IMG/VR virus record: IMGVR_UViG_3300027969_000039
Span: 186,001-250,000 of that record
Length of the DNA stretch: 64,000 nt
Strand: one strand, 5' to 3'
This document shows, piece by piece, positions 13,801-64,000 of this stretch; the stretch's first letter is position 1, and every line of letters begins with the position of its first letter. The position numbers and the translations under genes were made by a program. The notes under the pieces were generated by a model. That model made no database searches. It was not told where the DNA came from and worked only from the letters and a program-made list of their open reading frames with translations.

Positions 13801-16800
13801 TATTGTCTATGTCAGAAATATATAACCAAATTTGATCACCTGACAATGCAGTTGAAGTTCCCCATGTAGTAACACCAACTGGTGCTGCAATAGTTTGATA
13901 TAAATCTAATGTGTTAGATAAAGTGGTGTTTATTAACTGATAAATGTAAACATTAGGCGAACCAGTTGGTTCTGAAATCACAAACAAATCGTCAATATAT
14001 GTTATGTTAGACCCAAATGAAGCACCATGGGTCAAAGTTTGAATTGAACTGTAAGAGTTTGAATCAGAATAATATCTATATCTATTAACTGTTCCAGCAC
14101 CACTGTCACCAATTAAATATCCTAATGTGTCTGTATATGCAACTGCACTACCAAAATTATTGCTACTTAATTCAGTAATCTCATTGGTATATTGATAGTT
14201 TAAACTCTTGCGATAAACTGCCCAGCTACCATCATTGTTAGTGTCTACCCATACTTTTAATTTATTAAATTCATTGTCTAATAAAGGTAAGTTTATGATT
14301 TCTGGTGCAGTAGCTACGCGCTGATTCTGCATTCTGAAACCAACGCCTTGTCCAGTTAAACTAGTTATGTTAGGGTCAAGTGAGAGATTAATGATTACTC
14401 TATTTGTATCTACCACTGCTGCAACGATATAATAATTATCAATTGCAACATCAAAATTAACAATTGCAAAAACTTGATATACTGTTAAGTTATGTGCTTG
14501 ATTAAATCTTATTGTTACTGTGCCATTCAAATTATTTTGTGCTGCAATCACCGAACCTAGACTAGCTGGAGTATATACTTTCCAATCTGATAGATAGTTA
14601 GCTAACCAAGCATAATCACGTACATAGAACTCAGTTATTGGTATTGTTGTTCCAACTGAGTTTTGTGCTGTTGACAATCCAGAGTAATAGTAACTAGCCA
14701 TTTTAACATCATCGTAATTAACATATCCTGCCGTAGGATACAACTCAGATGGGTATGTATTAGCTATAGTAGGTAATATATCAACGTCAGTTATTGGACG
14801 ACCATAATTGAATACGCTATATATAGGCACTTGCTGTTGTACGCCATTTATAGCAATACCATTAGTTAATCCTACAATACTAGGGTTACCAGTTAATTCC
14901 GTTTGGTTCAATTTGAATTGAATGAAGTTATTATTTAATACTCCTCCAAACTCACCTGACTTGATAGCCCAATTTTCATATAACTCATAATCAATGCCAC
15001 CTTGCGCTAGTGTTGCACCTTTAAATGCACTTGCTGCATTTAATGTACCTTTATCTTTTATCATATTTTTATAAACATTGACTTGAGTGATATCAGTCAA
15101 ATCAGCCAATGCCATATAATCTCTTGGGCGATATCCAATTAAACTAAAACTTAATAGGTCAGCATCATTTTCTAAATTAGCCCTATTCACATCATAGTAC
15201 AATGTACTTTCGTATGAACGAGTTTGACTATTAGGTAATAATCCTTTTTGTATTTGATCGTAATCTGTTTGCAACCATTCTTGCTCATCAAACGTTTCTT
15301 TTGCTTGAACAATAGTTATAGCAGTCCAATATCTATTTTTATATTTTACAATTGAACCCTGAGTGTATTTTACTTCTCTGGTCCACTCTTGAATGTTATC
15401 TTGATTAAGGATGAATCCATATGCATCTACTGTTCCGTTCCATTCAGCAGTTTTTGTACCACGCACAGTGATACGATTTTGACGCAAACCTGTAACTAAA
15501 TTGTAGATCACATCATTGAATAATGTTAAGTTATTGAATACGATGCCATGTTCAATATTGCTGATGTTAAATTGACCATATGATATAGTATCACCGTCGT
15601 TTAATGCTGTTACTGTAAATGCAGTACCGTCACGAACAACAGACATGTCTGTGCCTGATATAGGATATAGATTCTGATTTAATATAAAATTAAATTGTTG
15701 CAATGTTAATGGTTGAACAATAGAACTTTCTTTGTTTATTGAAAGTATTTTTGCTGCAGGATTTATAGAAGTTATACTACCAACTGCCCATCCAGTCTGT
15801 GCCCAATATAAGAATTCAGCAATCATCTGATTCCAATTGATTGGAATACCATTTTCTATCTCATCAAATACAACACCTTTTTGTATTAGATATTCGCCGT
15901 AGCTAACTAAAAATTGTGATACTTGTTGAACCGTGTAAAATTCAGTTCCATATGGAACTGTTACTGTTCTATCATAGAAGTCAGTTGCTACTCTTACAGT
16001 AAGGTTGTCAACAGTGATAGTTTCAACTGCTGGATTTGGTTTAGGTGCTAATACTTTGAAGTATGCATTAGTCTGACTATTTCCAAATACTTTATATCCA
16101 CGATCAGTAACTTGTACTATTACACCACTATAAACTATTCTATCAAACGGTTGATTTTCGTATAATAATACTTGATAGCTTTCATCAGGAATTAATAATG
16201 AACTATTATTACTGTTGGCAGAACTCTTTTCAACATAGAACTTTAACAAATTCTTATCGCTAAAACCAGCTAAACGATATACTAAACGAACATCTAAATT
16301 ATTTAACAAGGTAGTTATGTTTGTAGTTGCATCAACTCCAACTTGTTTTTCATAATCAACAATCCAGTTGATATAACTGGTTGCAGGAGTACCTGAACCA
16401 TATATTGGTATATCACTTATAATCAAATGATTTATGTTGTTTACTAAGAATTGATTGAATTCAGCATTGTATTTGTAATTGTCAACATCTACTCCTAAAT
16501 TAAAGAAGTCTGCTGGCTTAGTTACTGCTAGTATACGCATCAAATCAAATGGCCAAGTACTACTTCTACGGTAGCTAAACTCTGCGGGCCCTACATCACC
16601 TACGACCCAATCACGTTGAAATGCATTTTCATCATATGCCCCTACAATAGAAATTAGTGGTGATACTAAATTTCCATTGCTATCAACTGGGATAATTTTT
16701 AATAAATCAGGACGAGCATAATTAGGTTTTATATAAGAATTACCGTTATTCCAAACTAATCCTTCAGCTAAATCTTCCCAAAGAACTAAGTTATCACTAG

Positions 16801-19800
16801 TGTATGGTGCTGCACCATATCTAGTTTCCCACCATGTTGGTTTATTAGCAATGCCTAACATTTCCCATGGTGTTTGATCTGGGGTTGAAGTATCGTAATA
16901 GTACAGATATAAACCTCTAAAATATCCTTGCTCAATTGGCTGGCGATTTATCTTGTTGCCACTGTCAACATAGTTATAACTAAATTGATTATTCTTATTG
17001 TAAAACTGTGTCTTGTAATCTATTCTATTTTGCCCTACCCAATTTAAGAAAGATTCACTATATATTTGTAAAAATTCATCGTAAGTATAACCTGTTTCTC
17101 TAAAGAATCCAGGTATTATTACACCTTCATATGAACCAGCCGGGACTGTTTCACTTAATTTTAAATTATTATAAACACGGGTTTCATATTCAAGTAACAC
17201 TTGGTCTCTGAAGTCAACTAATTTACCTGTACCAGGATTATAATTTCCATATAATTTAGTAAAAGAACCGTCATGTCCTACAATGAAATATGTTTCTGGA
17301 TTATATGCTGTATCTAATACTACCGCAGGTACCGTTGCAGGATATAATCCTAATTTAGTAGGAGTATTTGGTGCATAGCTACCATATGTTTGATTATATT
17401 CGTTTACTGTAATTTTGTCATTAGGTTGTAAATCAGTAGTGACAGTTAGTGTAGGACTATCTATACTAATAGTATAATCAATTCCTTTAATTAATTGAGT
17501 TTGTTTTTCGTTACGAGTAAGATATACCAAAACTCCATTATAATTTGCTGTAGTAAAATTATATATTTGACTCAATGGGTATATACTAGTATCTAATGAA
17601 TTAGCAAAAGAATATGTATTAGTAACATATGGTGCTTTTGCTGGAATCATGTCACTCCAGAAAAACGGTTGTTCATTATTACGTGCCGCATTCATTTGAA
17701 TGATTGCGTTATCTAGCATTTGAGCAGGGGTTAACATTGTGCTATAGCTAGAATTATTAATTGTATCAATTAATAGATTTTTAAAAGTAATATACTGTCT
17801 GCTATTGTATAATAGTGCATCAATTACATCATGTGTTTGGTTTCGTAAAAATACCCCAGGCAATACAAGCGAAGCACTATTCTGTATTATTCTATTACCC
17901 CATGGTACTAAATTACCTAAATCACGATAATTATTTGCCCCAAATACTTCACCGGTTGTATTTGGATTGTTAAAGAAGATGCTTTGATATTGTCCACGAA
18001 TGTCGCCAATGTTAGCAGTAGTTATATCTTCATTGAATGGATTGTTATTCAAATTATCAGGGATTTGATAATATGCTGTATTACTTACTTGATCACTTAA
18101 TACTAAAATTTGTATTACTGTTTCTACTGCATCAAAATTAAGAGGAATATTAACTGTGGTAGTAGTATTGGTAGTTGTTACCGTGTAATCAGTATTAGGT
18201 ATATAACGATTATTAATGTACACTTGTACAGTAGGCCAATTAGTTTTTGTAGAACTCATCGGAGAAACATCACATGTAAATGTGTACACCGGAGCAACTA
18301 TCGTCCAATCAAATTCAAATATTTGATATTGAACACTAGGAGAGACTGCGGTTTGCCAACCTAATGATCTCACATAGTTAATACGGTCAGTGTAATTATA
18401 TACATATCCGGTGTTAACTTTTTGTGTTATTGCCGTAGTGCCATTGACGTAATTAAAAGTATCTAAATTTAAAGAAACATCAAAACTAACATCCCCAATA
18501 TTGTCTATTGAACTATAACGTATTGGGAAACCTAAATATATATCATCAGTTCCTGAACCTATTCCATATCTAAACAATGTTGAACCAGTGAATGACGTAC
18601 TAGTATATACTAGAGGGTCACTAAAACTTATACCGTTTTCATCAAATATATCAAACTTTGGTGGTTGATTTACAGTTGTCTTTTGTTGTCCTGCATACCA
18701 ATTGTTCCCGTCAAAATAAAAATCTTTACCTATGTTATTGTATCCGCGATATACAGCAGTTTGCTCATCGGGTAATACTAATCCATCTTCAGCTTCAAAT
18801 AAAGTAATTACTGGAACACCATATGGTGTAGTAGTTGAAAATCTTGCTATATAGATTTTATTTCTTATGTTTGCTGTTGTGTCAACTGAAAATACTACTC
18901 TAGCACCGTCAAAAAGTGCATAGTTATCTAATGGAGTATCTGCTGTAACTACAGACGCAATTGAGGTCCCATCTATTATAGATTGACTATACCAGGTAAC
19001 CGTTATAATTGTGTTTGAGCCCACGACTGAAACATCACTAACTAAAGTAATAGAAGGCAATACACCAATCGTATCTGTTATATATTGATTGACTTCAAAT
19101 AACCCAGACACCCCGGTTGTAGGAACAGTTATAGTGGTAGAATACGGGTATATAGAAGTAGTCATTGTACCACTAGCGGTGGTAAGAATAACAGATTCTC
19201 CGCCTTTTAAAGTAGATACAGTTATTAAATTACTAGCAATATCAGTAATATAATAAGTAGTTCCGGATATTATTCCACCAAAAACAGTGCCGCCAAAACT
19301 TATAGTATCATTCACATGCAACGTAGCGGTACTACTCAATAAAATTTGATTGGTTACTGCATACGTTGTAGTTGCTGTTATACTAGTAATCGGACCAGAG
19401 ACAGGTGCTATTATTGCATCGTATGTTGTCCAACCTGCTACATCTGGATAGTATCCACTCTGTCCTGCTACATAGGTAAATGCGTCAGTTGTTCTAGTAT
19501 CAAAAAAATCTACCGGACTTTTTCCTACTGAACCAGAATCAAATAATTTTAAGTTAGGATAAAATTCAATTATTGGTCTTTTTGCTTTATTAGAATCAGT
19601 AGTATATTCTGTTATTAGTGCAGGAGTGTTGTTGTATGCAGCAGTAGCATTAATAACATCTATGTGAAACCAACGATTACTTCTTGACCATGCATTTCTA
19701 TTAACTGAATTTCTAGCAATGGTTATGTAATCTGGATTTATAGGAACATATAAACTAGAATCATAGTTTCCAACATCCCATGCGGTTGTGTCCCACGGTG

Positions 19801-21190
19801 TGTATTCACCAGAGGCAAATAACCCAGGTGATACTAAATTAGTTACTGTTAGTAACTCTATGTTAGTTCCAACACCTTCTACATAGTATTCTGTATTGTT
19901 ATACGTGTTAGGGAAAATATTTCCTTGGAATATAACTTTTAACCCGTTAGTGAACACTACTCCATTTGGAGAAGTATATTGTTTTTTACCTAATATGTCT
20001 GTTATAACATTAATTTGACTTGTGCTATTATTCTCAACTAGTTTAATAATACCTACTCTAGTAGAAATAGTATCATCTTGATAATACAACGTATCTAATA
20101 TTGGACTATTGTATGGTTCTAATTGTATGTAACCTAAATTATTTCTATAGAAAAGTCTATTAATCCATTGAGTGCCATATAATGCTATTATTTGCTGTTC
20201 GTTTGGAATAGCATCACCTAGTGTCAATGATATGACTGGATTATTGGTTGCGCCAGTTAGTGTGATTTGATAGAAATTAGTTTCTGTGCCTAAATCATTT
20301 TCGCCGGTATTATAAAACATTAGCGTCAATCCATCTAATGATGTTATTCCGTCAATGCCACCTATATCATTTACATATGCTCCGTTAACTTGACTATACG
20401 GAAGTGTAGAAACAACACCTACTGTATTGTCTCCAGAAAAAATATAATCAGCTAGTGCATTTTTTTGCGGAACATTAAATGTAATCGTTCCATCTGATAT
20501 CCCGTTATTAGTAACTCCGTATACATCACGGGTTTGAAGATTAGTTTGTGTTGGACTATAGCCAGTGACACCCGGTGCGCCTTGTATCCAAAAATTAGTA
20601 TTTTGATTAACAACAAATGTATAAGTTCCGCCACGGATTAAGGTTAGTGTTGGGTTAGCTTCTGCATCAGCTAATGATTCAGATGTTATTACATAATCAG
20701 CGGGTTCTGATGCAACTACATAAGTAGCTTGAGTATATACTGCGCTAGGTTGTACTGTGACACGTTCGGGTCCGGTTGGCAGCCAGTAATATTGATTATA
20801 GTTTATTATTTTATCTAAATCAGTAAAAGAATCCCATGAATAAAACTGACTACTAAACAATCTACTATTGTCATATGTTATTCCGCCACGTAATGTTAGT
20901 GCATCTATTATACCCGGATAACTAATAAAATCTTTTGCAGTAGTATCATTTTCTTTTAAGAAAACAACACCTGGATCTAATTGATAATCAGTTCTAGTTT
21001 TAGTTGGTTCAGTAACATAATAGTCATTGGCATTAACACCATATCCAAATTTACTACCAATGTAACCCTCAATTCTTTCAATATTGGGCTGTGCAACTAG
21101 CTGGTCCAATGTTGCTGCTAAAAATTGAGCATTGGTGGTAGTTTTGAATATTTCTGGTAGAAAATCTAGTGTTCTAATTCTTGTTGCCAT
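1811..21190 (-). CDS. Giant baseplate wedge/adhesin-like structural protein (gp7-like position), 6459 aa
   Basis: Directly downstream of gp6-like gene. Contains YLNEVKPYHV (wedge-type motif), FG-GAP-like blades (FGYSIA...VVVGTP, FGTSVDV...LIGAP), BNR-like SxDGxxW repeats and many beta-rich repeats. Confidence 0.75.
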   Translation of the reverse strand: MATRIRTLDFLPEIFKTTTNAQFLAATLDQLVAQPNIERIEGYIGSKFGYGVNANDYYVTEPTKTRTDYQLDPGVVFLKENDTTAKDFISYPGIIDALTLRGGITYDNSRLFSSQFYSWDSFTDLDKIINYNQYYWLPTGPERVTVQPSAVYTQATYVVASEPADYVITSESLADAEANPTLTLIRGGTYTFVVNQNTNFWIQGAPGVTGYSPTQTNLQTRDVYGVTNNGISDGTITFNVPQKNALADYIFSGDNTVGVVSTLPYSQVNGAYVNDIGGIDGITSLDGLTLMFYNTGENDLGTETNFYQITLTGATNNPVISLTLGDAIPNEQQIIALYGTQWINRLFYRNNLGYIQLEPYNSPILDTLYYQDDTISTRVGIIKLVENNSTSQINVITDILGKKQYTSPNGVVFTNGLKVIFQGNIFPNTYNNTEYYVEGVGTNIELLTVTNLVSPGLFASGEYTPWDTTAWDVGNYDSSLYVPINPDYITIARNSVNRNAWSRSNRWFHIDVINATAAYNNTPALITEYTTDSNKAKRPIIEFYPNLKLFDSGSVGKSPVDFFDTRTTDAFTYVAGQSGYYPDVAGWTTYDAIIAPVSGPITSITATTTYAVTNQILLSSTATLHVNDTISFGGTVFGGIISGTTYYITDIASNLITVSTLKGGESVILTTASGTMTTSIYPYSTTITVPTTGVSGLFEVNQYITDTIGVLPSITLVSDVSVVGSNTIITVTWYSQSIIDGTSIASVVTADTPLDNYALFDGARVVFSVDTTANIRNKIYIARFSTTTPYGVPVITLFEAEDGLVLPDEQTAVYRGYNNIGKDFYFDGNNWYAGQQKTTVNQPPKFDIFDENGISFSDPLVYTSTSFTGSTLFRYGIGSGTDDIYLGFPIRYSSIDNIGDVSFDVSLNLDTFNYVNGTTAITQKVNTGYVYNYTDRINYVRSLGWQTAVSPSVQYQIFEFDWTIVAPVYTFTCDVSPMSSTKTNWPTVQVYINNRYIPNTDYTVTTTNTTTTVNIPLNFDAVETVIQILVLSDQVSNTAYYQIPDNLNNNPFNEDITTANIGDIRGQYQSIFFNNPNTTGEVFGANNYRDLGNLVPWGNRIIQNSASLVLPGVFLRNQTHDVIDALLYNSRQYITFKNLLIDTINNSSYSTMLTPAQMLDNAIIQMNAARNNEQPFFWSDMIPAKAPYVTNTYSFANSLDTSIYPLSQIYNFTTANYNGVLVYLTRNEKQTQLIKGIDYTISIDSPTLTVTTDLQPNDKITVNEYNQTYGSYAPNTPTKLGLYPATVPAVVLDTAYNPETYFIVGHDGSFTKLYGNYNPGTGKLVDFRDQVLLEYETRVYNNLKLSETVPAGSYEGVIIPGFFRETGYTYDEFLQIYSESFLNWVGQNRIDYKTQFYNKNNQFSYNYVDSGNKINRQPIEQGYFRGLYLYYYDTSTPDQTPWEMLGIANKPTWWETRYGAAPYTSDNLVLWEDLAEGLVWNNGNSYIKPNYARPDLLKIIPVDSNGNLVSPLISIVGAYDENAFQRDWVVGDVGPAEFSYRRSSTWPFDLMRILAVTKPADFFNLGVDVDNYKYNAEFNQFLVNNINHLIISDIPIYGSGTPATSYINWIVDYEKQVGVDATTNITTLLNNLDVRLVYRLAGFSDKNLLKFYVEKSSANSNNSSLLIPDESYQVLLYENQPFDRIVYSGVIVQVTDRGYKVFGNSQTNAYFKVLAPKPNPAVETITVDNLTVRVATDFYDRTVTVPYGTEFYTVQQVSQFLVSYGEYLIQKGVVFDEIENGIPINWNQMIAEFLYWAQTGWAVGSITSINPAAKILSINKESSIVQPLTLQQFNFILNQNLYPISGTDMSVVRDGTAFTVTALNDGDTISYGQFNISNIEHGIVFNNLTLFNDVIYNLVTGLRQNRITVRGTKTAEWNGTVDAYGFILNQDNIQEWTREVKYTQGSIVKYKNRYWTAITIVQAKETFDEQEWLQTDYDQIQKGLLPNSQTRSYESTLYYDVNRANLENDADLLSFSLIGYRPRDYMALADLTDITQVNVYKNMIKDKGTLNAASAFKGATLAQGGIDYELYENWAIKSGEFGGVLNNNFIQFKLNQTELTGNPSIVGLTNGIAINGVQQQVPIYSVFNYGRPITDVDILPTIANTYPSELYPTAGYVNYDDVKMASYYYSGLSTAQNSVGTTIPITEFYVRDYAWLANYLSDWKVYTPASLGSVIAAQNNLNGTVTIRFNQAHNLTVYQVFAIVNFDVAIDNYYIVAAVVDTNRVIINLSLDPNITSLTGQGVGFRMQNQRVATAPEIINLPLLDNEFNKLKVWVDTNNDGSWAVYRKSLNYQYTNEITELSSNNFGSAVAYTDTLGYLIGDSGAGTVNRYRYYSDSNSYSSIQTLTHGASFGSNITYIDDLFVISEPTGSPNVYIYQLINTTLSNTLDLYQTIAAPVGVTTWGTSTALSGDQIWLYISDIDNNYVYVYRKSALTDLYEYSTRITVAGLVSGDTFGYSIATDYYGDTVVVGTPYKDYDVNTANYGYTYVFSRTVQNTISRTSNQPFIPIVIPLAWTPTTVSQTATATDSTTDRITVSSSAGFSVNDPVVFSGTLISAGAIAADTVYYVYDKPTSTTFRIALTRDATAPIDLITASGSMTVTVQTTPLFVSVNGTSLDDNTYAVTGSSLYVYSSQSPTINAGDLINISGSNFVLTQTLTNEETPRVGVEFGTSVDVNRYANEILIGAPYELSDKNYEGAVHRYTNAGEKYGMIVGDTTCTITAPRNILINGFNVILPIGDATSAATSINIVSIPNVYATTLNGKLVISLVDTTIGTAGNKLSLSVVDNATLSEIGITIYTQTQKIMCPHLDGRTQFGTVVKFDKSYSGSFIASAPVGARYTSTTFDFTDDELDNDTVFDNNATQWIDVFTNAGAVYMFDYLSAYNENIDNPGNFVYAQSTNSKDLDYGTQPYYGTALDFNSNHVTIGTPNFVPNTGYNGQVITYVSQSSTPDWAVYRSSAPVVDVNGIFNIQLFSALTNNTLENLDYIDPLQGKLLGAVAENIDITSNNDPAGYNSPADTQGGIVWSSDKVGQLWFDTSNTRFMNYHQNDVSYNSQWWGRVFPGSDVAVYSWISSNVPPSQYTGPGVPYNIDNYSVGGVINAEGLIAPIYYFWARNTNIIFEKLGKTLSDTVLEYYIIQPQATGITYFAPLLPSVYALYNAFAYINANDTVLNIGYATGSNNDVPHNQYSLIRANYADDFLSGTPGSGAGYQYRGAVGIDQPIGLYNRMLDSMCGVDNAGGVVPDPLLPKAVQTGVLSRPRQGFFYDRFGALKNYLQYANTVLAQFPIAEIRNPVFLTETGEAFDTTQYWYYINWWATGYNDATKASIQVPLYADLSTLEVAAGTIVKVISNGSGNGETYIYGADGLWTRIGLDNGTIEFSSVLWDYPSARLGFGDNFFDTTPFDSYPSTETRYIVRALNEEIYTNELLIFRNKSLILLFEYIQSETIESQNYLTWLNKTSFLDVSHTIRELVPIEVFRSDNQLFLEGYLNEVKPYHVVIKEFLFKYTRTDVFEGDITDFDLPAQWNANIGEFVSPQLVYNGGDSVYQYPPTSSIWDSNAYTEWYNNYGLSIGVFVDETQSYIGQKDFQISVLDSYLSLNTSYCYVGNVNGFPINGTITIGEEQIGYSGKDLLNNQLTGLTRGMNGTTITQHLPGEYIFMDLPPVIILNTGRNYINPPQITAYVDTTIYPEPRVPAQLQAIMSLGTVIGVEVINPGSGYAVLPNIVIDPAYILSIDSSQVNVLDNTININTAYDLQTGDVIVYSVGSNSTTIEGLIEGQQYYVNLLEITPSPVFALYTMYQEAIQDHNRVVFGNSGTGTQNFSIGAIGYCILNSMPIRENVITLRFDRTTYTSQVIDWAPGGLYGSFYAGDLHNSNQISSSSIKLYEEYPSIDSILASAAGATFEILDAENQQTLTWSSRTRNTVQTYGSSYSTVAYQNAIRINPSSGGAAVAGDIGSTIGFYIGMPVKFVGSTIGTSLVDSTTYYVKSLVQLPNANSTSSSNLDIGYNYVITVLGDTDWNSVADTVGVTYAVGDVVISKFVASGTGTAALLEDTGFTISDTVGIDGVPGAVFVQNTATIVTAGLILYVGQLVNQAILTINYTGLRNAVATTRTTNNVTVLLTPTGQNGTIGFYTTMPLFFVTNSAGNNETFGNIVENKIYYVLTVIDLETFTMSATNELPVMFEVTATSSSNNSITCETTQGLTINEPIIFTGTTFGNIVAGATYYVREKFTNGTSFSVSTSVNGEAVTLTTATGSCMLNSQDLAVQLTDGSGSMTLNVNLPVSPGQITGQQFTLYQTSQQYSGLSGTISNLLTRSISATLATVNRICISTFSGGLTNIYNGLKFNVGNDIGGLTTTGGPYTVTGTGTTALTVTDTTSSTNWLTAPLSLNPNLTDVLYVGMPIYFTGTSIGGVSLNLVYYVFSIDSSPPADTGRFTISEDQLFGSVYNVTTDSGLMTLSGEGYITVGTSLLNSTQAATITDSSTPTAATITVANGSAFPNGTAVVLSSTGTLPAPFNVYTTYYVANKSGNTFNLVYVVGGTTIKTTTTGSGTHYVLETQVQLVQEVVTDPNFDVSYILGGYRIVITSAGQGYAVDNTVTIAGSSIGGISPANDLTLTALTIDSIGGITSAVCVGTPAGVVEQYYLEVISSNQVAVYSNPELTAPVSGQNFSYSGITSTTATETVAASDRITVTSSASFNVNEPVVFTETVFGGISLGLTYYIYDKPTSTTVRISTLPALLSSLVQLTDATGSMTMASSGDYALLPEPFYFTPSIVKFNNRVYQCVVSNNDNEFIIGKWELLSPDNRNLNALDRIIGYYQPTVNMPGKDLAQLVNGITYPNSTYLGNAFAPADEYTLNTILTDQTFYPVGLNGQSIAVKDSTYFIASNSSDYSSINTSTLSNWTINKLSNTPINVTSIIYTGGTSGKFILSSNNTATPILVSDDGINWDATALYNSTDPILLASSGVTLNCVTNSSIASATVAVGSSIITSVTQPNDNVPYTWDETFTFTNGFTNEFNGVAYVSTAGFTGFIAVGLGQAASSGTVAPTNYGIIYSSADGFTWTQVPFTATSFSLNSIAGNSQTIVIVGDNGVIYTSFNGTTWFPQTSPVATNLNNVTWSTYLSTFIAVGDNGVILTAPTNGITWTQQTSNVTENLQSSVSDNVSGLLIVIGYNNTMLRSTNSTTWTLDNYVNTPAPIYNVQGDSFTEGYGPEELVAGVVSDNITMIVNTRPGTNWDQTIYQNIGYNVVSLEIAPTSGTQTQYSFINAVNVPIQISVFMIDYTTELSTTMILGSDYTIDWINKIVILSNPITYVSSTIHDNLRIDVYEVGNGDQLVKSNTEADPIKYNEVTGFSEIDVNANYSAGIYQGSGLIKPTTSPVTAYALSTNGINNTIQCDSVDDFVLNGAITFSGAVFGNIVEDQTYYVKSIGYTTNRITISDTYNSSTGTAGTIFFLSTASGLMDAIIQTGLGAAWSPPAVYHNGNLLVLGYTATVLRTKSSTNTITTITTSGLIVNTPIVFSETIFGGIVHHQTYYIKSIYDSNEFTISETVSGPVFQLTNATGSAEFISNDYSIGISTNGITAAIIFAANYDNTVDYLVYSFLGQTVPTQYGYTLPQTQLFIGDGSTDSFALDYFVGEDNPTNAIVEINGLRQSLSTYTISADNDSILFDTPPNVNDNISVTSYNLTERQYFSTSELTSSYTVAPIINVNNVITPTTAIIGITSTQAGSATVVNAGSFTTTKQYIIVSLGTTTNWNTVAGTTGVTYAVGSLFTAATVGSGNGTAKLANSLISTADPSLNLTVGQSIQFKTANINAGSFISSTQYCITSLGNTDWQSIASSYNWLSGYPVVGGIFTANAIGSGSGTAVLTTINGISTIGTNYTVSAITTNPNAAYAFTIQDELSASPTVTTGAVATVLTGYAGGFSAVTVTTSITPNFILNSLVRIDGVIGSVQLNNNLYYVRPMSTTQYELYTEPYNPALYAVNYPVTTISTYVSGGYIWIDGVFTIHDTVATATDDNGNRITVASTDILISNTPVYFTKYPAPSETNILGNILAKHKYYIFAVRPEISAGNFIIGNEYEITSLGTTNWNAIGYVGTPVTLGTFVATGTGTGTGTANGLQEFTISETPFPYQEEVQLVDASGSIYVTQYEQVNVDRLWVTINGYRVPSSSLRLNSYNNLSILSNIQTSDEVIITSMMPTASPNEETYLLNVSQQGDASVYRANHQTRTWLVSPLEILQDIIYLNDVTRVTDSIIQTVTAPALVDGTFNIGLISNKNVICHIQVYNNTTGLFLGGANFAIVIEDTAPILQIQPIGVSVGDSLTITTVEGRLLYINGEQIGFNECDLVANTVSQLTRGANGTGMQAYIPVYSEAFGLIPNNRMSDVLYSATWNPIPGIYNTEDGDPLQIAYTQGANFLRTDIT

Positions 21191-37953: not shown

Positions 37954-38604
37954 ATGTTTATCAAAAACGAATCTTATATTAGATATTATGAAATTATAAC
38001 TCAAGCAAATAATATATGCCCGCGCACTATAAAAAAGTCTGAAGCTATGGAAATCAGAGGATACATTGAAGACCACCATATCATTCCTAAATGTTTGGGA
38101 GGACAAGATATTATTTCTAATAAAGTATGGTTGACTGCCGAAGAACATTTTATGTGTCATAAACTCCTAACTGAAATGACAGTAGATAATGCTAACGGTA
38201 AAATGTGGAGTGCATTATGGCGTATGATGAATAAACAAAGTAAAAATCAAGGACGAGATTATATTATTGATGCCAAAGAGTATGCAACAGCGAGAGAACA
38301 AAATGCAAAAAATCATAGCATCAGAATGAAAGGTGAACTAAATCCATTTTATAAAAAAACACACACTGATTCTACTAAAGAAGCAATGTCTGTTAGTAAG
38401 AAGGGCAAAACTTATGAAGAAATATTTGGAAAAGATAAAGCCGACGAGATGAGAGATCGCAGAAGAAGTGAAAGTTTAGGTAAACTAAAGGGCCCACAAC
38501 TAAAATCTACATGTCCACATTGTGGTGTTGACGGTGGGTTTGGTATAATGAAACGATGGCACTTTGAGAATTGTAAATTTTTAGGTAACGTTAAAACATC
38601 ATAA
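37954..38604 (+). mobile_element. Free-standing HNH homing endonuclease with NUMOD3-like DNA-binding motif and C-terminal Cys/His motif
   Basis: EDHHIIPKCLGG...NKVWLTAEEHFMCHKLL (HNH); GELNPFYKKTHTDSTKEAMS (NUMOD3-like); CPHC...RWHFENCK. Confidence 0.85.
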
Positions 38605-38606
38605 GT

Positions 38607-39164
38607 ATGATTATGTCAAGTCCACAGAAAAACAAAGGTTCAGGTTTCGAAAGAGAAATCGCTAAATATCTATCCGATACTTACGGCGAAAGTTTTATTC
38701 GTGCCCCAGGGTCTGGAGCATATGTGGGCGGGAAGAATCAACATAGAACACAAATATTACATGAGGGGCAAGTTCGTTCATTTAAGGGCGATATTGTACC
38801 TGGACAATCATTCAGTAGAATGAATGTTGAGTGTAAGTTTTATGCAGATTTTCCGTTTCATTTGATACTTACTGGAGAGTGTAAAGTATTAGATGGTTGG
38901 CTAACGCAACTAATGGATGTTGCTGATCCAGACGATGTGAATATTCTTTTTCTGAAGTTTAATCGTAAAGGTCGCTATGTTTGTGTACAAAGCAAACTAA
39001 CATGGGTTGCGGACAATTTCACTTATTACACCTCTCAAAAACACGGAGACTGGATGATTTTCGAATTTGATAGTTTCTTCTTACATAATATACCAATATT
39101 AAAATCATATTGTTCAACAGACACCAAGTCAAATCAAAGTTCCATATTAACTATTAATGTTTAA
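38607..39164 (+). CDS. Holliday junction resolvase-like PD-(D/E)XK nuclease (Hjc type); true start possibly 38613
   Basis: KNKGSGFEREIA...RAPGSGA...GDI...NVECK; located in the recombination cluster. Confidence 0.8.
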   Translation: MIMSSPQKNKGSGFEREIAKYLSDTYGESFIRAPGSGAYVGGKNQHRTQILHEGQVRSFKGDIVPGQSFSRMNVECKFYADFPFHLILTGECKVLDGWLTQLMDVADPDDVNILFLKFNRKGRYVCVQSKLTWVADNFTYYTSQKHGDWMIFEFDSFFLHNIPILKSYCSTDTKSNQSSILTINV

Positions 39165-39169
39165 AAATT

Positions 39170-39530
39170 TGTTGGCTCAGTTGTGAGTCCTCCTTGAGTT
39201 TGTACAGATTGTGCTGTGCTGACGGATCTGGAGTATGCTTATCAGTAATGATAAGGAAAACCGAGAAGGCTCTCGTCAAAGCGAACCTTCAATGAGTCTA
39301 TATCCAACTCTATCTTGCGGATATAGAACATGCGTTGTCGAAGAATCAATTGAAAGACATTGGTAGCTTCACTACAGTCCCAAAAACACTACAGGACAAC
39401 CGGTTGCGTATAATGTCAGAAATAGGCAATTATACGGGGAACAGATGGCAAAGGATGACGGGCATGGCAAGTTTCCATTGGTAGTGCAAATTTGCACTAC
39501 CATGGCTCTCTAAGCGGCAATATATATCCG
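39170..39530 (+). ncRNA. Candidate large structured non-coding RNA (family unknown)
   Basis: No ORF of 60 aa or more; visibly more G+C-rich than other intergenic DNA; at least seven stems, including a GNRA-capped hairpin and nested helices. Strand inferred from the GTAA tetraloop and G-U pairs. Confidence 0.5.
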
Positions 39531-39569
39531 ATACAATAAAGTTTTTGAGAATACAAAATTGTAGAAAAA

Positions 39570-39612
39570 TAAGACCGAACGAAGTGAGGTCTTAGACAAA
39601 CGAAGTTTGTCT
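39570..39612. repeat. Two adjacent hairpins with GAA mini-loops
   Basis: TAAGACC-GA-AC-GAA-GT-GA-GGTCTTA and AGACAAAC-GAA-GTTTGTCT. Confidence 0.7.
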
Positions 39613-39653
39613 TTAAATGGATATCCCGATTTTGATAAATGAATAATTACGGA

Positions 39654-39890
39654 TTAGAAGAATGGCATCTGTGTTTTCTTAGTAGTTTCTAAATTATCTT
39701 CTACTATCCTGCCAATGGCTTCTCTTTCATTCGGGGACATGTTAAGTATATCTTCATATGTTACCCCTCCCCGCATGTACCAAGAAAACTTTAACGAAGA
39801 TTCTTTTATACTAAAGGCTTCTTTTTCCAGATCATCTAATAATTTTTGTATCTGCTCGTTGTTCAGAGAAAGAAGCCTTAATCGAAAAAA
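39654..39890 (-). CDS. -1 frame extension of the tail/baseplate assembly chaperone (gp51/gpGT-like); missing from ORF track
   Basis: Open from the slippery run to TAA at 39654: FFRLRLLSLNNEQIQKLLDDLEKEAFSIKESSLKFSWYMRGGVTYEDILNMSPNEREAIGRIVEDNLETTKKTQMPFF*. An in-frame TGA lies immediately upstream and the first ATG is mid-domain. Confidence 0.7.
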   Translation of the reverse strand, partial: FFRLRLLSLNNEQIQKLLDDLEKEAFSIKESSLKFSWYMRGGVTYEDILNMSPNEREAIGRIVEDNLETTKKTQMPFF

Positions 39891-40699
39891 TCAGTTACAT
39901 TTAATGTTAATGTTTGTGTGTATTCATGTGAGCAATTTACACATTGTATTTTTTGTGGTTTAATATTTGAATCGGATCTTAGATTTACCATAGTAGTACG
40001 AATCTTTTCAAATGTACTTCTATCACATGAAGATAAGAATTCAATAATAAATTTAGGATCAGTTACTGTTTCTCCAGGAACACTTATAGATTCTATAGTC
40101 ATAGATATCAAGTTCATATTAAGTGTAGATAGTTTTTTCATTATCTCGCCGGATTTAGTATTTCGTAAATTATCATCTTGCATTTCTTGCAAAACTGAAA
40201 TTTCTCTTTGTGCTTCAAACTGTGCTAAGTTAAGTTTGTTACTATCATTATATGTAATTGGTTTAAATTTGATTATTAAATCACCAATTGGAAAAGTATT
40301 ACCATAATCAACATTTTTAATGCTTTGTAGTAAACCACCTAGATTAATAGCGTAGGATCCTTCATTTTCACATTCTGGACAATTTGATTTTATTTCTAAT
40401 TCATTTCCATTAGTTGCTGAACGAATAGCAATCAATATAGCGTCTATGTCTATATTTGGCATTTTCCATGGATCTTTGATTGCAGGAATACAGCTTTTTA
40501 TAATCTCAACGACCGCGCTACCGTTAAATAATGCGTCTGGAGTTTTACTAGTAATTTCATCAATAGCAGTCATGGGGTAAACAGGAAGTTCACCACTTTC
40601 AGGCATGTCGATGGATCCCTCAGGGTAATATTGCCCTTTACTAGGTAGTGTAAGATACAATGCAGGTCTGCGGAAATACTGTTTTAAGGGGTTGTTCAT
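39878..40699 (-). CDS. gp26: Baseplate hub assembly/tail chaperone, T4 gp26/gp51 family
   Basis: LYLTLPSKG...VYPMTAIDE...DIDAILIAIRSAT...CPEC...CVNC...DFF end; GGAG Shine-Dalgarno; divergent from the tape measure gene. Confidence 0.75.
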   Translation of the reverse strand: MNNPLKQYFRRPALYLTLPSKGQYYPEGSIDMPESGELPVYPMTAIDEITSKTPDALFNGSAVVEIIKSCIPAIKDPWKMPNIDIDAILIAIRSATNGNELEIKSNCPECENEGSYAINLGGLLQSIKNVDYGNTFPIGDLIIKFKPITYNDSNKLNLAQFEAQREISVLQEMQDDNLRNTKSGEIMKKLSTLNMNLISMTIESISVPGETVTDPKFIIEFLSSCDRSTFEKIRTTMVNLRSDSNIKPQKIQCVNCSHEYTQTLTLNVTDFFD

Positions 40700-40733
40700 T
40701 GATAATTCTCCAAAATATTGTATTTTTAAAACA

Positions 40734-40756
40734 CTAAATACAAGTAAACTATTTAT
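40734..40756. promoter_or_regulatory. Overlapping face-to-face late promoters for tape measure (+, CTAAATA 40734-40740) and chaperone (-, ATAAATA 40750-40756)
   Basis: Both motifs lie in the 85-bp gap between the divergent genes. Confidence 0.5.
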
Positions 40757-50178: not shown

Positions 50179-50220
50179 AAACGGAATCAAACTTTTACCC
50201 TCGGGATGGGAAGTTTACTT

Positions 50221-50244
50221 AAAGGGCTCTTCGGAGCCTTTTTT
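50221..50244 (+). terminator. Rho-independent terminator after the major capsid gene
   Basis: AAAGGGCTC-TTCG-GAGCCTTTTTT (UUCG tetraloop, U-tract); late promoter ATAAATA follows at 50253-50259. Confidence 0.9.
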
Positions 50245-50280
50245 GTTTTTGCATAAATACTATATAACAATGGAATAATT

Positions 50281-58314: not shown

Positions 58315-64000
<5,686 letters not shown>

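What the first reader, a model, noticed from the sequence alone, without database searches (positions are those of the whole stretch)
39570..39612. Tandem ssDNA-type hairpins (GAA triloops, tandem G-A pairs) at the convergence of the two transcription units
Seen: TAAGACC-GA-AC-GAA-GT-GA-GGTCTTA abuts AGACAAAC-GAA-GTTTGTCT. Established: c-GAA-g loops and tandem sheared G-A pairs are exceptionally stable in DNA but not in RNA. Inference: these act as DNA hairpins or cruciforms rather than terminators, for example an origin or primase site, a packaging signal, or a substrate for the neighbouring resolvase. A structured RNA region followed by DNA-type hairpins could form one RNA-primed origin module.
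Basis: partly seen in the sequence, partly recalled or inferred. Interest (0 to 1): 0.6.

Follow-up and report, generated by a model that had tools for sequence, protein, structure and literature searches.

The report
Conserved G·A hairpin pair after phage ncRNA
Two short hairpins with G·A-closed loops are real, single-copy and almost invariant in over 190 related freshwater jumbo-phage contigs. They always sit about 45 bases behind a previously undescribed 355-base structured RNA, and they do not look like this phage group's ordinary terminators.

Summary
Hairpin 1 (39570-39594) and hairpin 2 (39594-39612) are exactly as described.

- **Setting.** The window is part of a 303-kb T4-like jumbo phage.
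- **Conservation.** The pair occurs once in the genome but is kept in more than 190 IMG/VR contigs. Stem changes are compensatory: 99% of cells are paired, 9 of 16 pairs changed on both sides, and 0 of 500 shuffles matched this.
- **Strand specificity.** The tandem G·A pairs and the C-G(N)NA-G loops are kept on the + strand only.
- **Linked RNA.** The pair always lies 42-57 nt 3' of a + strand RNA of about 355 nt (39171-39518). That RNA has 46 covarying pairs and no Rfam match.
- **Not a plain terminator.** A control terminator after the capsid-like gene, compared across relatives, has GC-rich stems that vary freely, UUCG or GAAA loops and U7 tails. The hairpin pair has none of these features.

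RNA versus DNA is not settled. I favour a transcribed 3' stem-loop domain of the ncRNA unit that also ends the convergent late operon (about 0.42).
- the loops fit the DNA mini-hairpin rule rather than GNRA;
- the stems almost lack G·T pairs;
- the + strand is the non-template strand.

The site shows no repeat family and no GC-skew break.

The parts
38607..39164 (+). PDDEXK_15 putative Holliday-junction resolvase gene, the last + strand gene. The ncRNA starts directly after its stop codon.
   Evidence: Pfam PF24608 E=4.5e-24 and PHROG 244. It lies immediately upstream of the ncRNA in every locus with enough sequence. Cultured relatives annotate it as D14/RusA-like resolvase.
39171..39518 (+). 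Candidate new structured ncRNA of about 355 nt. It has at least 10 helices, a closing helix 39171-39173/39516-39518, a GNRA-capped hairpin at 39239-39254 and an invariant 22-nt palindrome at 39480-39501.
   Evidence: RNAalifold on 34 relatives gives 96 pairs, 46 with compensatory changes. Many G·U pairs and the GNRA loops are valid only on the + strand. No ORF exceeds 49 aa. No Rfam hit. Metatranscriptome contigs lie on it.
39519..39569 (+). A+T-rich linker (about 77% A+T, A-rich on the + strand). Its sequence varies but its length is kept.
   Evidence: Column identity is 0.59-0.65, against 0.8-0.9 in the ncRNA. The distance from ncRNA end to hairpin 1 is 42-48 nt in most of 109 parsed relatives and 52-57 nt in a minority.
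39570..39594 (+). Hairpin 1: a 7-bp stem, tandem G·A pairs, a 2-bp inner helix and a GAA triloop.
   Evidence: The architecture stem-GA-2bp-G(N)NA-2bp-GA-stem is found in 111 of 128 distinct relatives by a strict parse. The inner pair covaries (AC/GT, GC/GC, AT/AT, GT/AC). The tandem-GA unit is doubled in L147, L157 and L185.
39594..39612 (+). Hairpin 2: an 8-bp stem closed by C-G with a GAA triloop.
   Evidence: There are 32 distinct versions with at least 9 stem sequences and 249 of 256 cells Watson-Crick. Loops are GAA 89, GTA 11, GATA 5, GTTA 5, GCTA 4, GCA 2, and GCAA, GCCA, GTAA 1 each; flipped loops are TGC 2 and TTC 1.
39634..39652 (+). Conserved box GATAAATGAATAATTACGG between hairpin 2 and the stop codon of the last - strand gene. 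Its role is unknown.
   Evidence: It is conserved across relatives and stays with the hairpins when extra - strand genes are inserted. It resembles the late-promoter motif GATAAATA in 7 of 8 positions, but GATAAATG is not promoter-associated (1 of 12 copies).
39654..39869 (-). Small conserved - strand gene, about 71 codons from stop to stop (first ATG at 39776). It is the last gene of the convergent late unit.
   Evidence: It is conserved at 51-100% identity in relatives, with the C-terminus ...ETTKKTQMPFF.
39878..40699 (-). Baseplate hub gene (T4_baseplate family).
   Evidence: Pfam PF12322 E=6.4e-21 and PHROG 150.

Best explanation
The two hairpins are the conserved 3' stem-loop domain of one + strand transcription unit: PDDEXK gene, 355-nt ncRNA, A-rich spacer, hairpins.

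Proposed mechanism:
- Transcription runs from the ncRNA through the spacer into the hairpins.
- In the RNA the hairpins fold into two compact stem-loops held by sheared G·A pairs (a tandem GA internal loop and G...A-closed loops).
- There they mark or protect the 3' end and most likely serve as a sequence-specific binding site for a protein.
- Because the stems are kept strictly Watson-Crick, the complementary hairpins also form in - strand RNA. Followed by a U-rich run, they help to end the convergent late baseplate operon.

Shown: the structure, its strand-specific conservation, its fixed linkage to the ncRNA, and its difference from ordinary terminators. Inferred: that the active form is RNA, that a protein binds it, and that it defines 3' ends.
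For: - **Linkage to the ncRNA.** The ncRNA is on the + strand (G·U pairs and GNRA loops). The hairpins follow it in every contig with enough upstream sequence (about 125 of 128 loci, the other three being cut off), and also in a set found through the ncRNA alone.
- **Spacing and insertions.** Spacer length is kept while spacer sequence drifts. Foreign genes insert between the hairpins and the small ORF, and between SbcC and the PDDEXK gene. They never insert between the ncRNA and the hairpins.
- **Strand-specific features.** The G·A pairs and G...A loops are readable only on the + strand, and 120 of 128 hairpin-2 loops have that polarity. RNA parameters favour the + strand fold of hairpin 1.
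- **RNA libraries.** In metatranscriptome run X20, contigs cover 39162-39589, reaching into hairpin 1, and none lie on 39636-40597. X19's only contig lies on the ncRNA.
- **No other + strand stop.** No other terminator-like site exists on the + strand between 38500 and 41000.
- **- strand tail.** In most relatives the - strand has a U-rich run directly after hairpin 1.
Against: - **Loop type.** The loops are GNA triloops and mostly GNYA tetraloops (GATA, GTTA, GCTA). These are not the UUCG or GNRA loops that the same phages use in real RNA hairpins.
- **Few wobble pairs.** G·T wobble is nearly absent from the stems: 1 of 256 cells in hairpin 2 and one lineage in hairpin 1. About a quarter of ncRNA pairs show G·U.
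- **Weak tails and stems.** There is no U tract after hairpin 2 on the + strand, with a mean of 2.7 T in 9 nt. As a - strand terminator, hairpin 1 is weak (-6.5 kcal/mol, 11-nt loop). Three lineages lack the U run.
- **Limits of the read data.** The RNA-library evidence is from contigs only. It gives no strand and no ends, and it is biased toward conserved sequence.
- **No binding protein is known.**
Confidence: 0.42

Rival explanations
1. DNA-level element. When the ncRNA unit is transcribed, or the A+T-rich spacer opens, the non-template + strand folds into two mini-hairpins of the d(C-GNA-G) type stiffened by tandem sheared G·A pairs. These resist single-strand-binding protein. They stabilise an R-loop or mark a loading or priming site, as on the displaced strand at ColE1, the ssi signals of RSF1010, the G4/St-1 complementary-strand origins, or mitochondrial OriL.
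For: - **Loop repertoire.** It matches the measured DNA mini-hairpin rule. Of all 64 triloops only GNA forms the mini-hairpin; GATA, GTTA, GCAA and GTAA tetraloops are all stable; and the corresponding RNA is about 37 degrees less stable (PMC13037366; loops).
- **Canonical core in relatives.** Some relatives carry the canonical GCGAAGC core.
- **G·A context.** All tandem G·A pairs sit in the 5'-Y-GA-R-3' context.
- **Stems and loops.** Stems almost never use G·T. Real RNA hairpins of these phages use UUCG or GNRA loops instead.
- **Strand and spacer.** The favoured strand is the non-template strand of the ncRNA unit. The spacer is A+T-rich, sequence-free and of kept length, like an unwinding element.
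- **Neighbours.** The neighbouring genes are recombination and replication nucleases.
Against: - The cumulative GC skew has its minimum about 7 kb away, at the divergent gene switch, with no break at the site.
- There is no iteron, repeat family or second copy.
- In the window itself the pair next to the closing C-G is A-T. The review calls two G-C pairs essential for the extreme stability.
- Stems of 7-8 bp extrude poorly from duplex DNA (my own knowledge).
- T4-type phages are not known to use hairpin signals.
- The ncRNA has a closed, multi-helix fold typical of a stand-alone RNA rather than a pre-primer.
- Tandem G·A pairs and G...A loops are equally at home in RNA.
Confidence: 0.33
2. A plain bidirectional intrinsic terminator: two back-to-back hairpins, one for each convergent unit, with no further role.
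For: - The pair sits exactly at the convergence point. It stays there when extra - strand genes are inserted.
- A U-rich run follows hairpin 1 on the - strand, and an A-rich run precedes it on the + strand.
- Strict Watson-Crick stems fit a need to fold on both RNA strands.
Against: - **Control terminator.** After the capsid-like gene, 53 of 77 relatives have a canonical terminator by a strict parse. These show 35 different stems at 79% GC, loops UUCG (33) and GAAA (9), and 7.0 T in the 8-nt tail. None has a C-GNA-G loop.
- **The hairpin pair differs.** It is nearly invariant in sequence across more divergent phages (hub protein 47-100% identity). Its stems are A+T-rich, its loops have a fixed strand polarity, and it has no + strand U tract.
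- The consensus scan flags neither hairpin.
Confidence: 0.1
3. A duplex-DNA recognition site. Examples are a site for a homing endonuclease, a packaging or partition protein, or the neighbouring nucleases. On this view the palindromy reflects a dimeric protein and not a folded strand.
For: - Sequence conservation is extreme: an exact 20-mer with two degenerate positions occurs in at least 119 contigs.
- Free-standing homing endonuclease genes insert nearby in several relatives.
Against: - Stems change by compensatory double substitutions that keep pairing and not sequence.
- The inner 2-bp helix covaries, and the tandem-GA unit is duplicated in three lineages.
- The loop asymmetry is strand-specific. 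A duplex site would not require any of this.
Confidence: 0.05

Closest known systems
DNA mini-hairpins d(GCGNAGC) / d(GCGNNAGC) and their uses at G4, St-1 and alpha3 complementary-strand origins, RSF1010 ssiA, and phage N4 early promoters (PMC13037366)
   Same: Loops are closed 5'-C...G-3' with a sheared G·A pair. The same set of allowed loops is seen (GAA, GTA, GCA, GATA, GTTA, GCAA, GTAA). Two hairpins stand side by side on one strand. The setting is a phage, next to replication and recombination genes.
   Different: Those elements act on single-stranded genomes, plasmid origins, or with a virion RNA polymerase. Here the genome is a double-stranded T4-like phage with sigma-70-like early promoters and gp55-type late promoters. 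No physical or functional test exists. The second G-C pair, said to be essential, is A-T in the window. For an N4-type promoter the orientation would give a transcript antisense to the ncRNA.
Intrinsic (Rho-independent) bidirectional terminators
   Same: Position between convergent units. Hairpins that fold on both strands. A U-rich run on the - strand side.
   Different: Weak A+T-rich stems, an 11-nt loop in hairpin 1, and no + strand U tract. The sequence is nearly invariant and the loops are strand-polar. The family's real terminators are GC-rich, vary freely and are capped by UUCG or GAAA.
ColE1-type RNA-primed origin (structured RNA II, origin, then a primosome assembly hairpin on the displaced strand) and T4 oriF/oriG R-loop origins
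   Same: The order of parts: a structured transcript, then an A+T-rich stretch, then hairpins on the non-template strand.
   Different: There is no evidence of replication initiation here. The ncRNA has a closed fold with paired ends. T4 origins have no such hairpins. The skew gives no signal.
RNA tandem sheared G·A motifs and GNRA-like loops as protein-binding 3' stem-loops (k-turn-like and boxB-like elements)
   Same: Tandem G·A pairs in the Y-GA-R context, G...A-closed loops, strong sequence conservation suggesting a protein partner, and a position at the end of an RNA.
   Different: There is no 3-nt bulge, so it is not a k-turn. The loops are triloops or GNYA, not GNRA or a pentaloop. No partner protein is known.

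Membership tests
Intrinsic terminator | G+C-rich stem with a loop of 3-8 nt | tested here: not met
   The consensus scan flags neither hairpin on either strand. Hairpin 1 has an 11-nt loop if the inner fold is ignored. The common relatives' stem AAGAAC/GTTCTT has 2 G-C pairs. Control terminators have stems of 79% GC.
Intrinsic terminator | U tract directly after the hairpin on the transcribed strand | tested here: inconclusive
   On the + strand the mean is 2.7 T in the 9 nt after hairpin 2, so the feature is not met. On the - strand a U-rich run follows hairpin 1 in most relatives but not in the L020, L027 and L047 types.
Intrinsic terminator | Evolves as structure, not sequence: stems and loops drift among relatives | tested here: not met
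   The control shows 35 different stems among 53 terminators. The hairpin pair keeps an exact 20-mer in at least 119 contigs.
DNA mini-hairpin d(C-GNA-G / C-GNNA-G) | Loop GNA or GNNA with G first and A last, closed by 5'-C...G-3' | tested here: met
   120 of 128 hairpin-2 versions and nearly all hairpin-1 inner loops fit. The rule is taken from PMC13037366.
DNA mini-hairpin d(C-GNA-G / C-GNNA-G) | Two G-C pairs next to the loop (GC...GC or CC...GG) | tested here: not met
   The window has AC-GAA-GT and AAC-GAA-GTT. The feature is met only in some relatives: GC-GAA-GC, GAGC-GAA-GCTC and GACC-GAA-GGTC.
DNA mini-hairpin d(C-GNA-G / C-GNNA-G) | Extraordinary thermal and nuclease stability as DNA, much lower as RNA | not testable with these tools
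   The nearest-neighbour folding used here has no special terms for these DNA loops. DNA energies of -3.9 and -5.5 kcal/mol are therefore not informative.
Single-strand initiation or priming signal, or replication origin | Replication or priming starts at the site; skew or coverage break | tested here: not met
   The cumulative GC-skew minimum is at genome position 218,335 (window about 32.3 kb), at the divergent gene switch. The only local dip matches the 1-kb - strand island. Actual initiation could not be tested.
Phage N4-type hairpin promoter | 5-7 bp stem, 3-nt purine-rich loop on the template strand, plus a virion RNA polymerase | tested here: inconclusive
   Stem and loop geometry fit. 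With the + strand as template, the transcript would be antisense to the ncRNA. Presence of a virion RNA polymerase was not tested. The phage has sigma-70-like early promoters and gp55-type late promoters.
GNRA tetraloop hairpin (RNA) | Purine at loop position 3 | tested here: not met
   Most loops are triloops. Among the tetraloops GATA, GTTA, GCTA, GGTA and GCCA dominate, and only GCAA and GTAA fit. The ncRNA's own hairpin does fit, with GTAA, GCAA, GCGA and GTGA.
Kink-turn | 3-nt bulge followed by tandem sheared G·A pairs | tested here: not met
   The tandem G·A pairs are present but the internal loop is a symmetric 2x2 without a bulge.
Any Rfam family | Covariance-model match | tested here: not met
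   No match at gathering score in the whole window. Only chance-level hits at E up to 10 in 38550-39700.

The most novel reading that the evidence does not exclude
The PDDEXK gene, ncRNA, A+T-rich spacer and + strand mini-hairpins together form an RNA-primed, ColE1- or OriL-like replication or recombination start site of a T4-like jumbo phage. Transcription of the structured RNA opens the spacer. The displaced strand folds into SSB-resistant G·A mini-hairpins. These recruit the phage primosome or a nuclease. This would be the first hairpin-marked origin described in a T4-type phage. The 355-nt RNA would be a new class of origin RNA.
Probability: 0.15. Interest if true: 0.85.

Novelty: new variant of a known kind. 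Interest (0 to 1): 0.62.

Why it matters
The hairpin pair is one of the most conserved stretches of this phage lineage. It is more conserved than the flanking proteins. It also carries a structural signature (tandem sheared G·A pairs and C-GNA-G loops) that the phages' ordinary RNA hairpins do not use.

It led to a large, strongly covarying RNA of about 355 nt that is absent from Rfam and found in more than 190 freshwater jumbo-phage contigs, always wedged between a putative resolvase gene and the hairpins. Large structured phage RNAs of unknown function are rare and are sought after.

If the hairpins act as DNA, they would give T4-like phages a hairpin-marked initiation signal so far known only from single-stranded phages, plasmids and N4. 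If they act as RNA, they define a new protein-binding or 3'-end motif. In both cases the module is compact (about 1 kb), can be synthesised, and is directly testable.

Tried and rejected
- **Genome-wide family.** Exact and degenerate searches for C-GAA-G hairpins and for the GA-NN-GNA-NN-GA architecture found only this site. So did blastn and nhmmer with the whole module.
- **Rfam.** Nothing at gathering score; only chance hits at E up to 10.
- **Enclosing helix.** CCGTAA (TTGTAG in the window, 39559-39564) could pair with TTACGG (39647-39652), which would make a three-way junction. The arms are 86% complementary. Swapping partners among sequences gives 84.6 ± 0.7%, so there is no covariation, and I do not claim the helix. 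The alternative local helix CCCG/CGGG is poorly supported.
- **Box 39634-39652 as a late promoter.** The phage's late motif is GATAAATA (29 of 35 copies lie upstream of genes). The box's GATAAATG is not promoter-associated (1 of 12), and it would drive antisense transcription.
- **GC skew.** No signal at the site.
- **Cultured relatives.** No DNA match in the phage collection. In Salicola phage SCTP-2 and PA5oct the homologous resolvase gene is followed directly by another gene, with no ncRNA or hairpins.
- **PDB and NCBIfam** for the PDDEXK protein: no hits.
- **RNA libraries.** Only assembled contigs were available, so they give no strand, no ends and no levels.
- **Contig ends piling up in the ncRNA**. 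I read these as assembly breaks at sequence shared by co-occurring strains, not as physical genome ends.
- **First terminator parse of the control set.** It undercounted because A/T flanks paired. It was redone with trimming.

Full report
**Context**

The window is bases 186001-250000 of a single 303,057-bp contig. Gene content identifies a T4-like jumbo phage. It includes:
- gp55 late sigma factor;
- SbcD/SbcC (gp47/gp46);
- a free-standing homing endonuclease;
- a PDDEXK_15 putative resolvase;
- a T4-type baseplate hub and a T4-type portal.

The portal is about 50% identical to those of Atu_ph07, Phosso and PA5oct. No cultured phage matches the region at the DNA level. Sequencing runs holding the stretch are freshwater and lake metagenomes.

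**The observation**

Hairpin 1 is at 39570-39594 and hairpin 2 at 39594-39612, sharing one A. Both fold better than dinucleotide shuffles as RNA or DNA on either strand, with z-scores from -3.0 to -4.1 for the 61-63-nt stretch.

The site lies between the end of the + strand unit and a two-gene - strand island, made up of a small ORF ending at 39654 and the hub gene 39878-40699. So "convergence of two transcription units" is correct.

**What lies beside the hairpins**

The 400 nt between the PDDEXK stop codon (39164) and the hairpins hold no ORF longer than 49 codons. They are nevertheless more conserved than the flanking proteins.

An exact 22-nt palindrome from this block (39480-39501) occurs in 54 IMG/VR contigs. 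An alignment of 34 non-identical relatives gives a consensus fold of 96 pairs, 46 of which have compensatory double changes.

Two features fix the RNA on the + strand:
- many pairs are G·U on the + strand and would be A·C on the other strand (for example columns 11/25, 8/374 and 263/275);
- one hairpin is capped by GTAA, GCAA, GCGA or GTGA.

The RNA spans about 39171-39518, with a closing helix joining its ends. It has no Rfam match at gathering score or at E up to 10.

Contigs from three metatranscriptome studies lie on it. In run X20 they cover 39162-39589 and nothing between 39636 and 40597. A near-identical X18 contig bridges the PDDEXK stop codon (39066-39218), which fits co-transcription. 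These are assembled contigs, so they show presence only; they do not show strand or ends.

**Conservation of the hairpins**

Every relative found through the ncRNA palindrome has both hairpins. All loci with enough upstream sequence carry the ncRNA at a fixed distance. A third, unbiased scan with an internal ncRNA pattern again found the pair in every locus long enough to hold it, including much more divergent versions.

On 31 distinct sequences chosen without reference to the hairpins:
- 99.0% of pair cells are standard pairs;
- 9 of 16 pairs show changes on both sides;
- none of 500 shuffles reaches the observed values;
- sliding the partners gives 26-41% pairing.

Both hairpin architectures are single copy in the 303-kb genome.

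**Strand-specific detail**

Hairpin 1 keeps the plan stem / GA / 2 bp / G(N)NA / 2 bp / GA / stem in 111 of 128 distinct versions by a strict parse. Most of the rest are near variants.
- The inner 2-bp helix covaries (AC/GT, GC/GC, AT/AT, GT/AC).
- The G·A positions do not change.
- In three lineages (L147, L157, L185) the tandem-GA unit is doubled.

Hairpin 2 has 32 distinct versions with at least nine stem sequences, and 249 of 256 cells are Watson-Crick. The loop is closed by C-G. It reads G...A on the + strand in 120 of 128 cases:

| Loop on the + strand | Count |
|---|---|
| GAA | 89 |
| GTA | 11 |
| GATA | 5 |
| GTTA | 5 |
| GCTA | 4 |
| GCA | 2 |
| GCAA, GCCA, GTAA | 1 each |

Three versions carry the flipped loop.

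**Not an ordinary terminator**

I used the canonical terminator after the capsid-like gene (window about 50215-50250) as a control and fetched 80 relatives at 77-97% protein identity. By a strict parse, 53 of 77 distinct downstream regions have a canonical terminator, with these properties:
- 35 different stems, 79% G+C;
- loops UUCG (33) and GAAA (9);
- 7.0 T in the 8-nt tail;
- no C-GNA-G loop.

The hairpin pair is the opposite on each count. Its sequence is nearly fixed over a wider divergence (hub protein 47-100% identity). Its stems are A+T-rich and its loops are GNA. It has a mean of 2.7 T in the 9 nt after hairpin 2. The consensus scan flags neither hairpin.

On the - strand a U-rich run does follow hairpin 1 in most relatives, though not in the L020, L027 and L047 types. 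A secondary role in ending the late operon is therefore plausible.

**One module**

Homing-endonuclease and other genes have been inserted on the - strand between the hairpins and the small ORF in several relatives, and between SbcC and the PDDEXK gene in others. None has been inserted between the PDDEXK gene, the ncRNA and the hairpins.

The spacer between ncRNA and hairpin 1 varies in sequence (identity about 0.6, 77% A+T) but keeps its length: 42-48 nt in most relatives and 52-57 nt in a minority. A conserved 19-nt box (39634-39652) stays on the hairpin side of the insertions.

**RNA or DNA?**

For RNA:
- the ncRNA is on the same strand;
- nothing else could end that transcript;
- RNA-library contigs run into hairpin 1 and stop;
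- tandem sheared G·A pairs are stable RNA motifs. Turner parameters give the + strand hairpin 1 -8.5 kcal/mol against -6.5 for its complement. The rest is textbook knowledge that I did not retrieve.

For DNA:
[quoted passage not shown] In the review PMC13037366, only GNA among all 64 triloops forms it. GATA, GTTA, GCAA and GTAA tetraloops melt at 69.5-72 degrees, and r(GCGAAAGC) melts at 39 degrees against 76.5 for DNA. Such hairpins occur at the G4, St-1 and alpha3 origins, at RSF1010 ssiA and at N4 promoters.
- Most tetraloop variants here have a pyrimidine at position 3 and so are not GNRA. The RNA hairpins of the same phages use GNRA or UUCG.
- G·T pairs are almost absent from the stems, whereas about a quarter of ncRNA pairs show G·U.
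- The favoured strand is the non-template strand of the ncRNA unit, followed by an A+T-rich spacer.

Against DNA:
- there is no skew break and no repeats;
- the pair next to the closing C-G is A-T in the window, where the review calls two G-C pairs essential;
- the stems are short for extrusion;
- the ncRNA has a closed fold.

I rate the two readings at about 0.42 (RNA 3' domain, with - strand termination as a side role) and 0.33 (DNA mini-hairpins on the displaced strand). A plain terminator gets 0.10 and a duplex-DNA site 0.05.

- "Search the genome and relatives for similar hairpins": none elsewhere in the genome, but orthologous copies in more than 190 contigs.
- "GC-skew break": none.
- [quoted passage not shown]: neither refutation holds on sequence evidence. 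3'-end mapping remains to be done.

**Comparison with known systems**

The element works most like a conserved 3' stem-loop domain, or like an ssi-type DNA hairpin signal. It is a member of neither by test. Terminator features are not met. The mini-hairpin loop rule is met, but the stem rule is not met in the window, and stability is untestable here. It is not a k-turn because it has no bulge, it is not GNRA, and it has no Rfam family. Cultured relatives (SCTP-2, PA5oct) have the resolvase gene but neither the ncRNA nor the hairpins. The module therefore seems specific to this uncultured freshwater clade.

**Verdict**

The finding is real and unusual. The larger discovery beside it is the ncRNA. 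I rate the novelty as a new variant of known kinds (G·A hairpin elements and phage structured RNAs) and the interest as moderately high. 

Noticed in passing
window 39171-39518 (+): Candidate new class of large structured phage ncRNA, about 355 nt. It has 96 predicted pairs, 46 of them with compensatory changes, and no Rfam hit. It lies directly after a PDDEXK resolvase-like gene in more than 190 IMG/VR contigs. Its function is unknown.
   Followed up: partly
window 39480-39501: A perfect 22-nt palindrome inside the ncRNA (GGTAGTGCA-AATT-TGCACTACC), exact in 54 viral contigs. As RNA it is a 9-bp hairpin with a self-complementary AAUU loop, which could allow kissing-loop dimerisation.
   Followed up: no
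window 39634-39652: A conserved box GATAAATGAATAATTACGG between hairpin 2 and the stop of the last - strand gene. It matches the phage's late-promoter motif in 7 of 8 positions, but this variant is not promoter-associated elsewhere. Its 3' half is complementary to a conserved CCGTAA upstream of hairpin 1, without covariation.
   Followed up: partly
whole genome (for example window 40733-40741; genome-wide counts): A late-promoter-like motif GATAAATA(C), also ACTAAATA and AATAAATA. Of 35 GATAAATA copies, 29 lie within 80 nt upstream of a gene on the same strand. A strong sigma-70-like early promoter, TTGACA followed by TAAATGGTTTTGGGTATATAAT, also recurs in the left part of the genome.
   Followed up: partly
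window 1811-21190 (-): A single ORF of 6459 codons with no solid Pfam match in its first 5000 residues, only a sub-threshold FG-GAP hit. It is followed by further ORFs of 1124, 1344 and 923 codons on the same strand.
   Followed up: no
window 58315-63999 (+): The G+C-rich stretch (0.47-0.50 against 0.35 elsewhere) is an ORF of at least 1895 codons made largely of collagen triple-helix repeats (Pfam E=1.5e-206).
   Followed up: partly
window 37954-38604 (+); loci L021, L074, L089, L096, L098, L115, L145: Mobile genes come and go around the module. The free-standing homing endonuclease upstream of the PDDEXK gene is present in only a few relatives. Other endonuclease-like or SGNH-like genes are inserted on the - strand between the hairpins and the small ORF.
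   Followed up: partly
window 39654-39869 (-): The small conserved late gene after the hub gene has no ATG, GTG or TTG at its conserved N-terminal part in the window (first ATG at 39776). Relatives start with ATG further upstream. This suggests an unusual start codon or translational coupling to the hub gene.
   Followed up: no
loci L005-L143: About 25 of 125 IMG/VR contigs end within 400 nt upstream of the hairpins, inside the ncRNA. This is several times the chance expectation. It is probably assembly fragmentation at a sequence shared by co-occurring strains, but physical DNA ends were not excluded.
   Followed up: no
window 50215-50250 and loci L196-L275: The terminator after the capsid-like gene is a textbook case of structure-only conservation. 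Relatives show dozens of different GC-rich stems, nearly all capped by UUCG or GAAA and followed by T6-8, and often by a late promoter for the next gene.
   Followed up: yes
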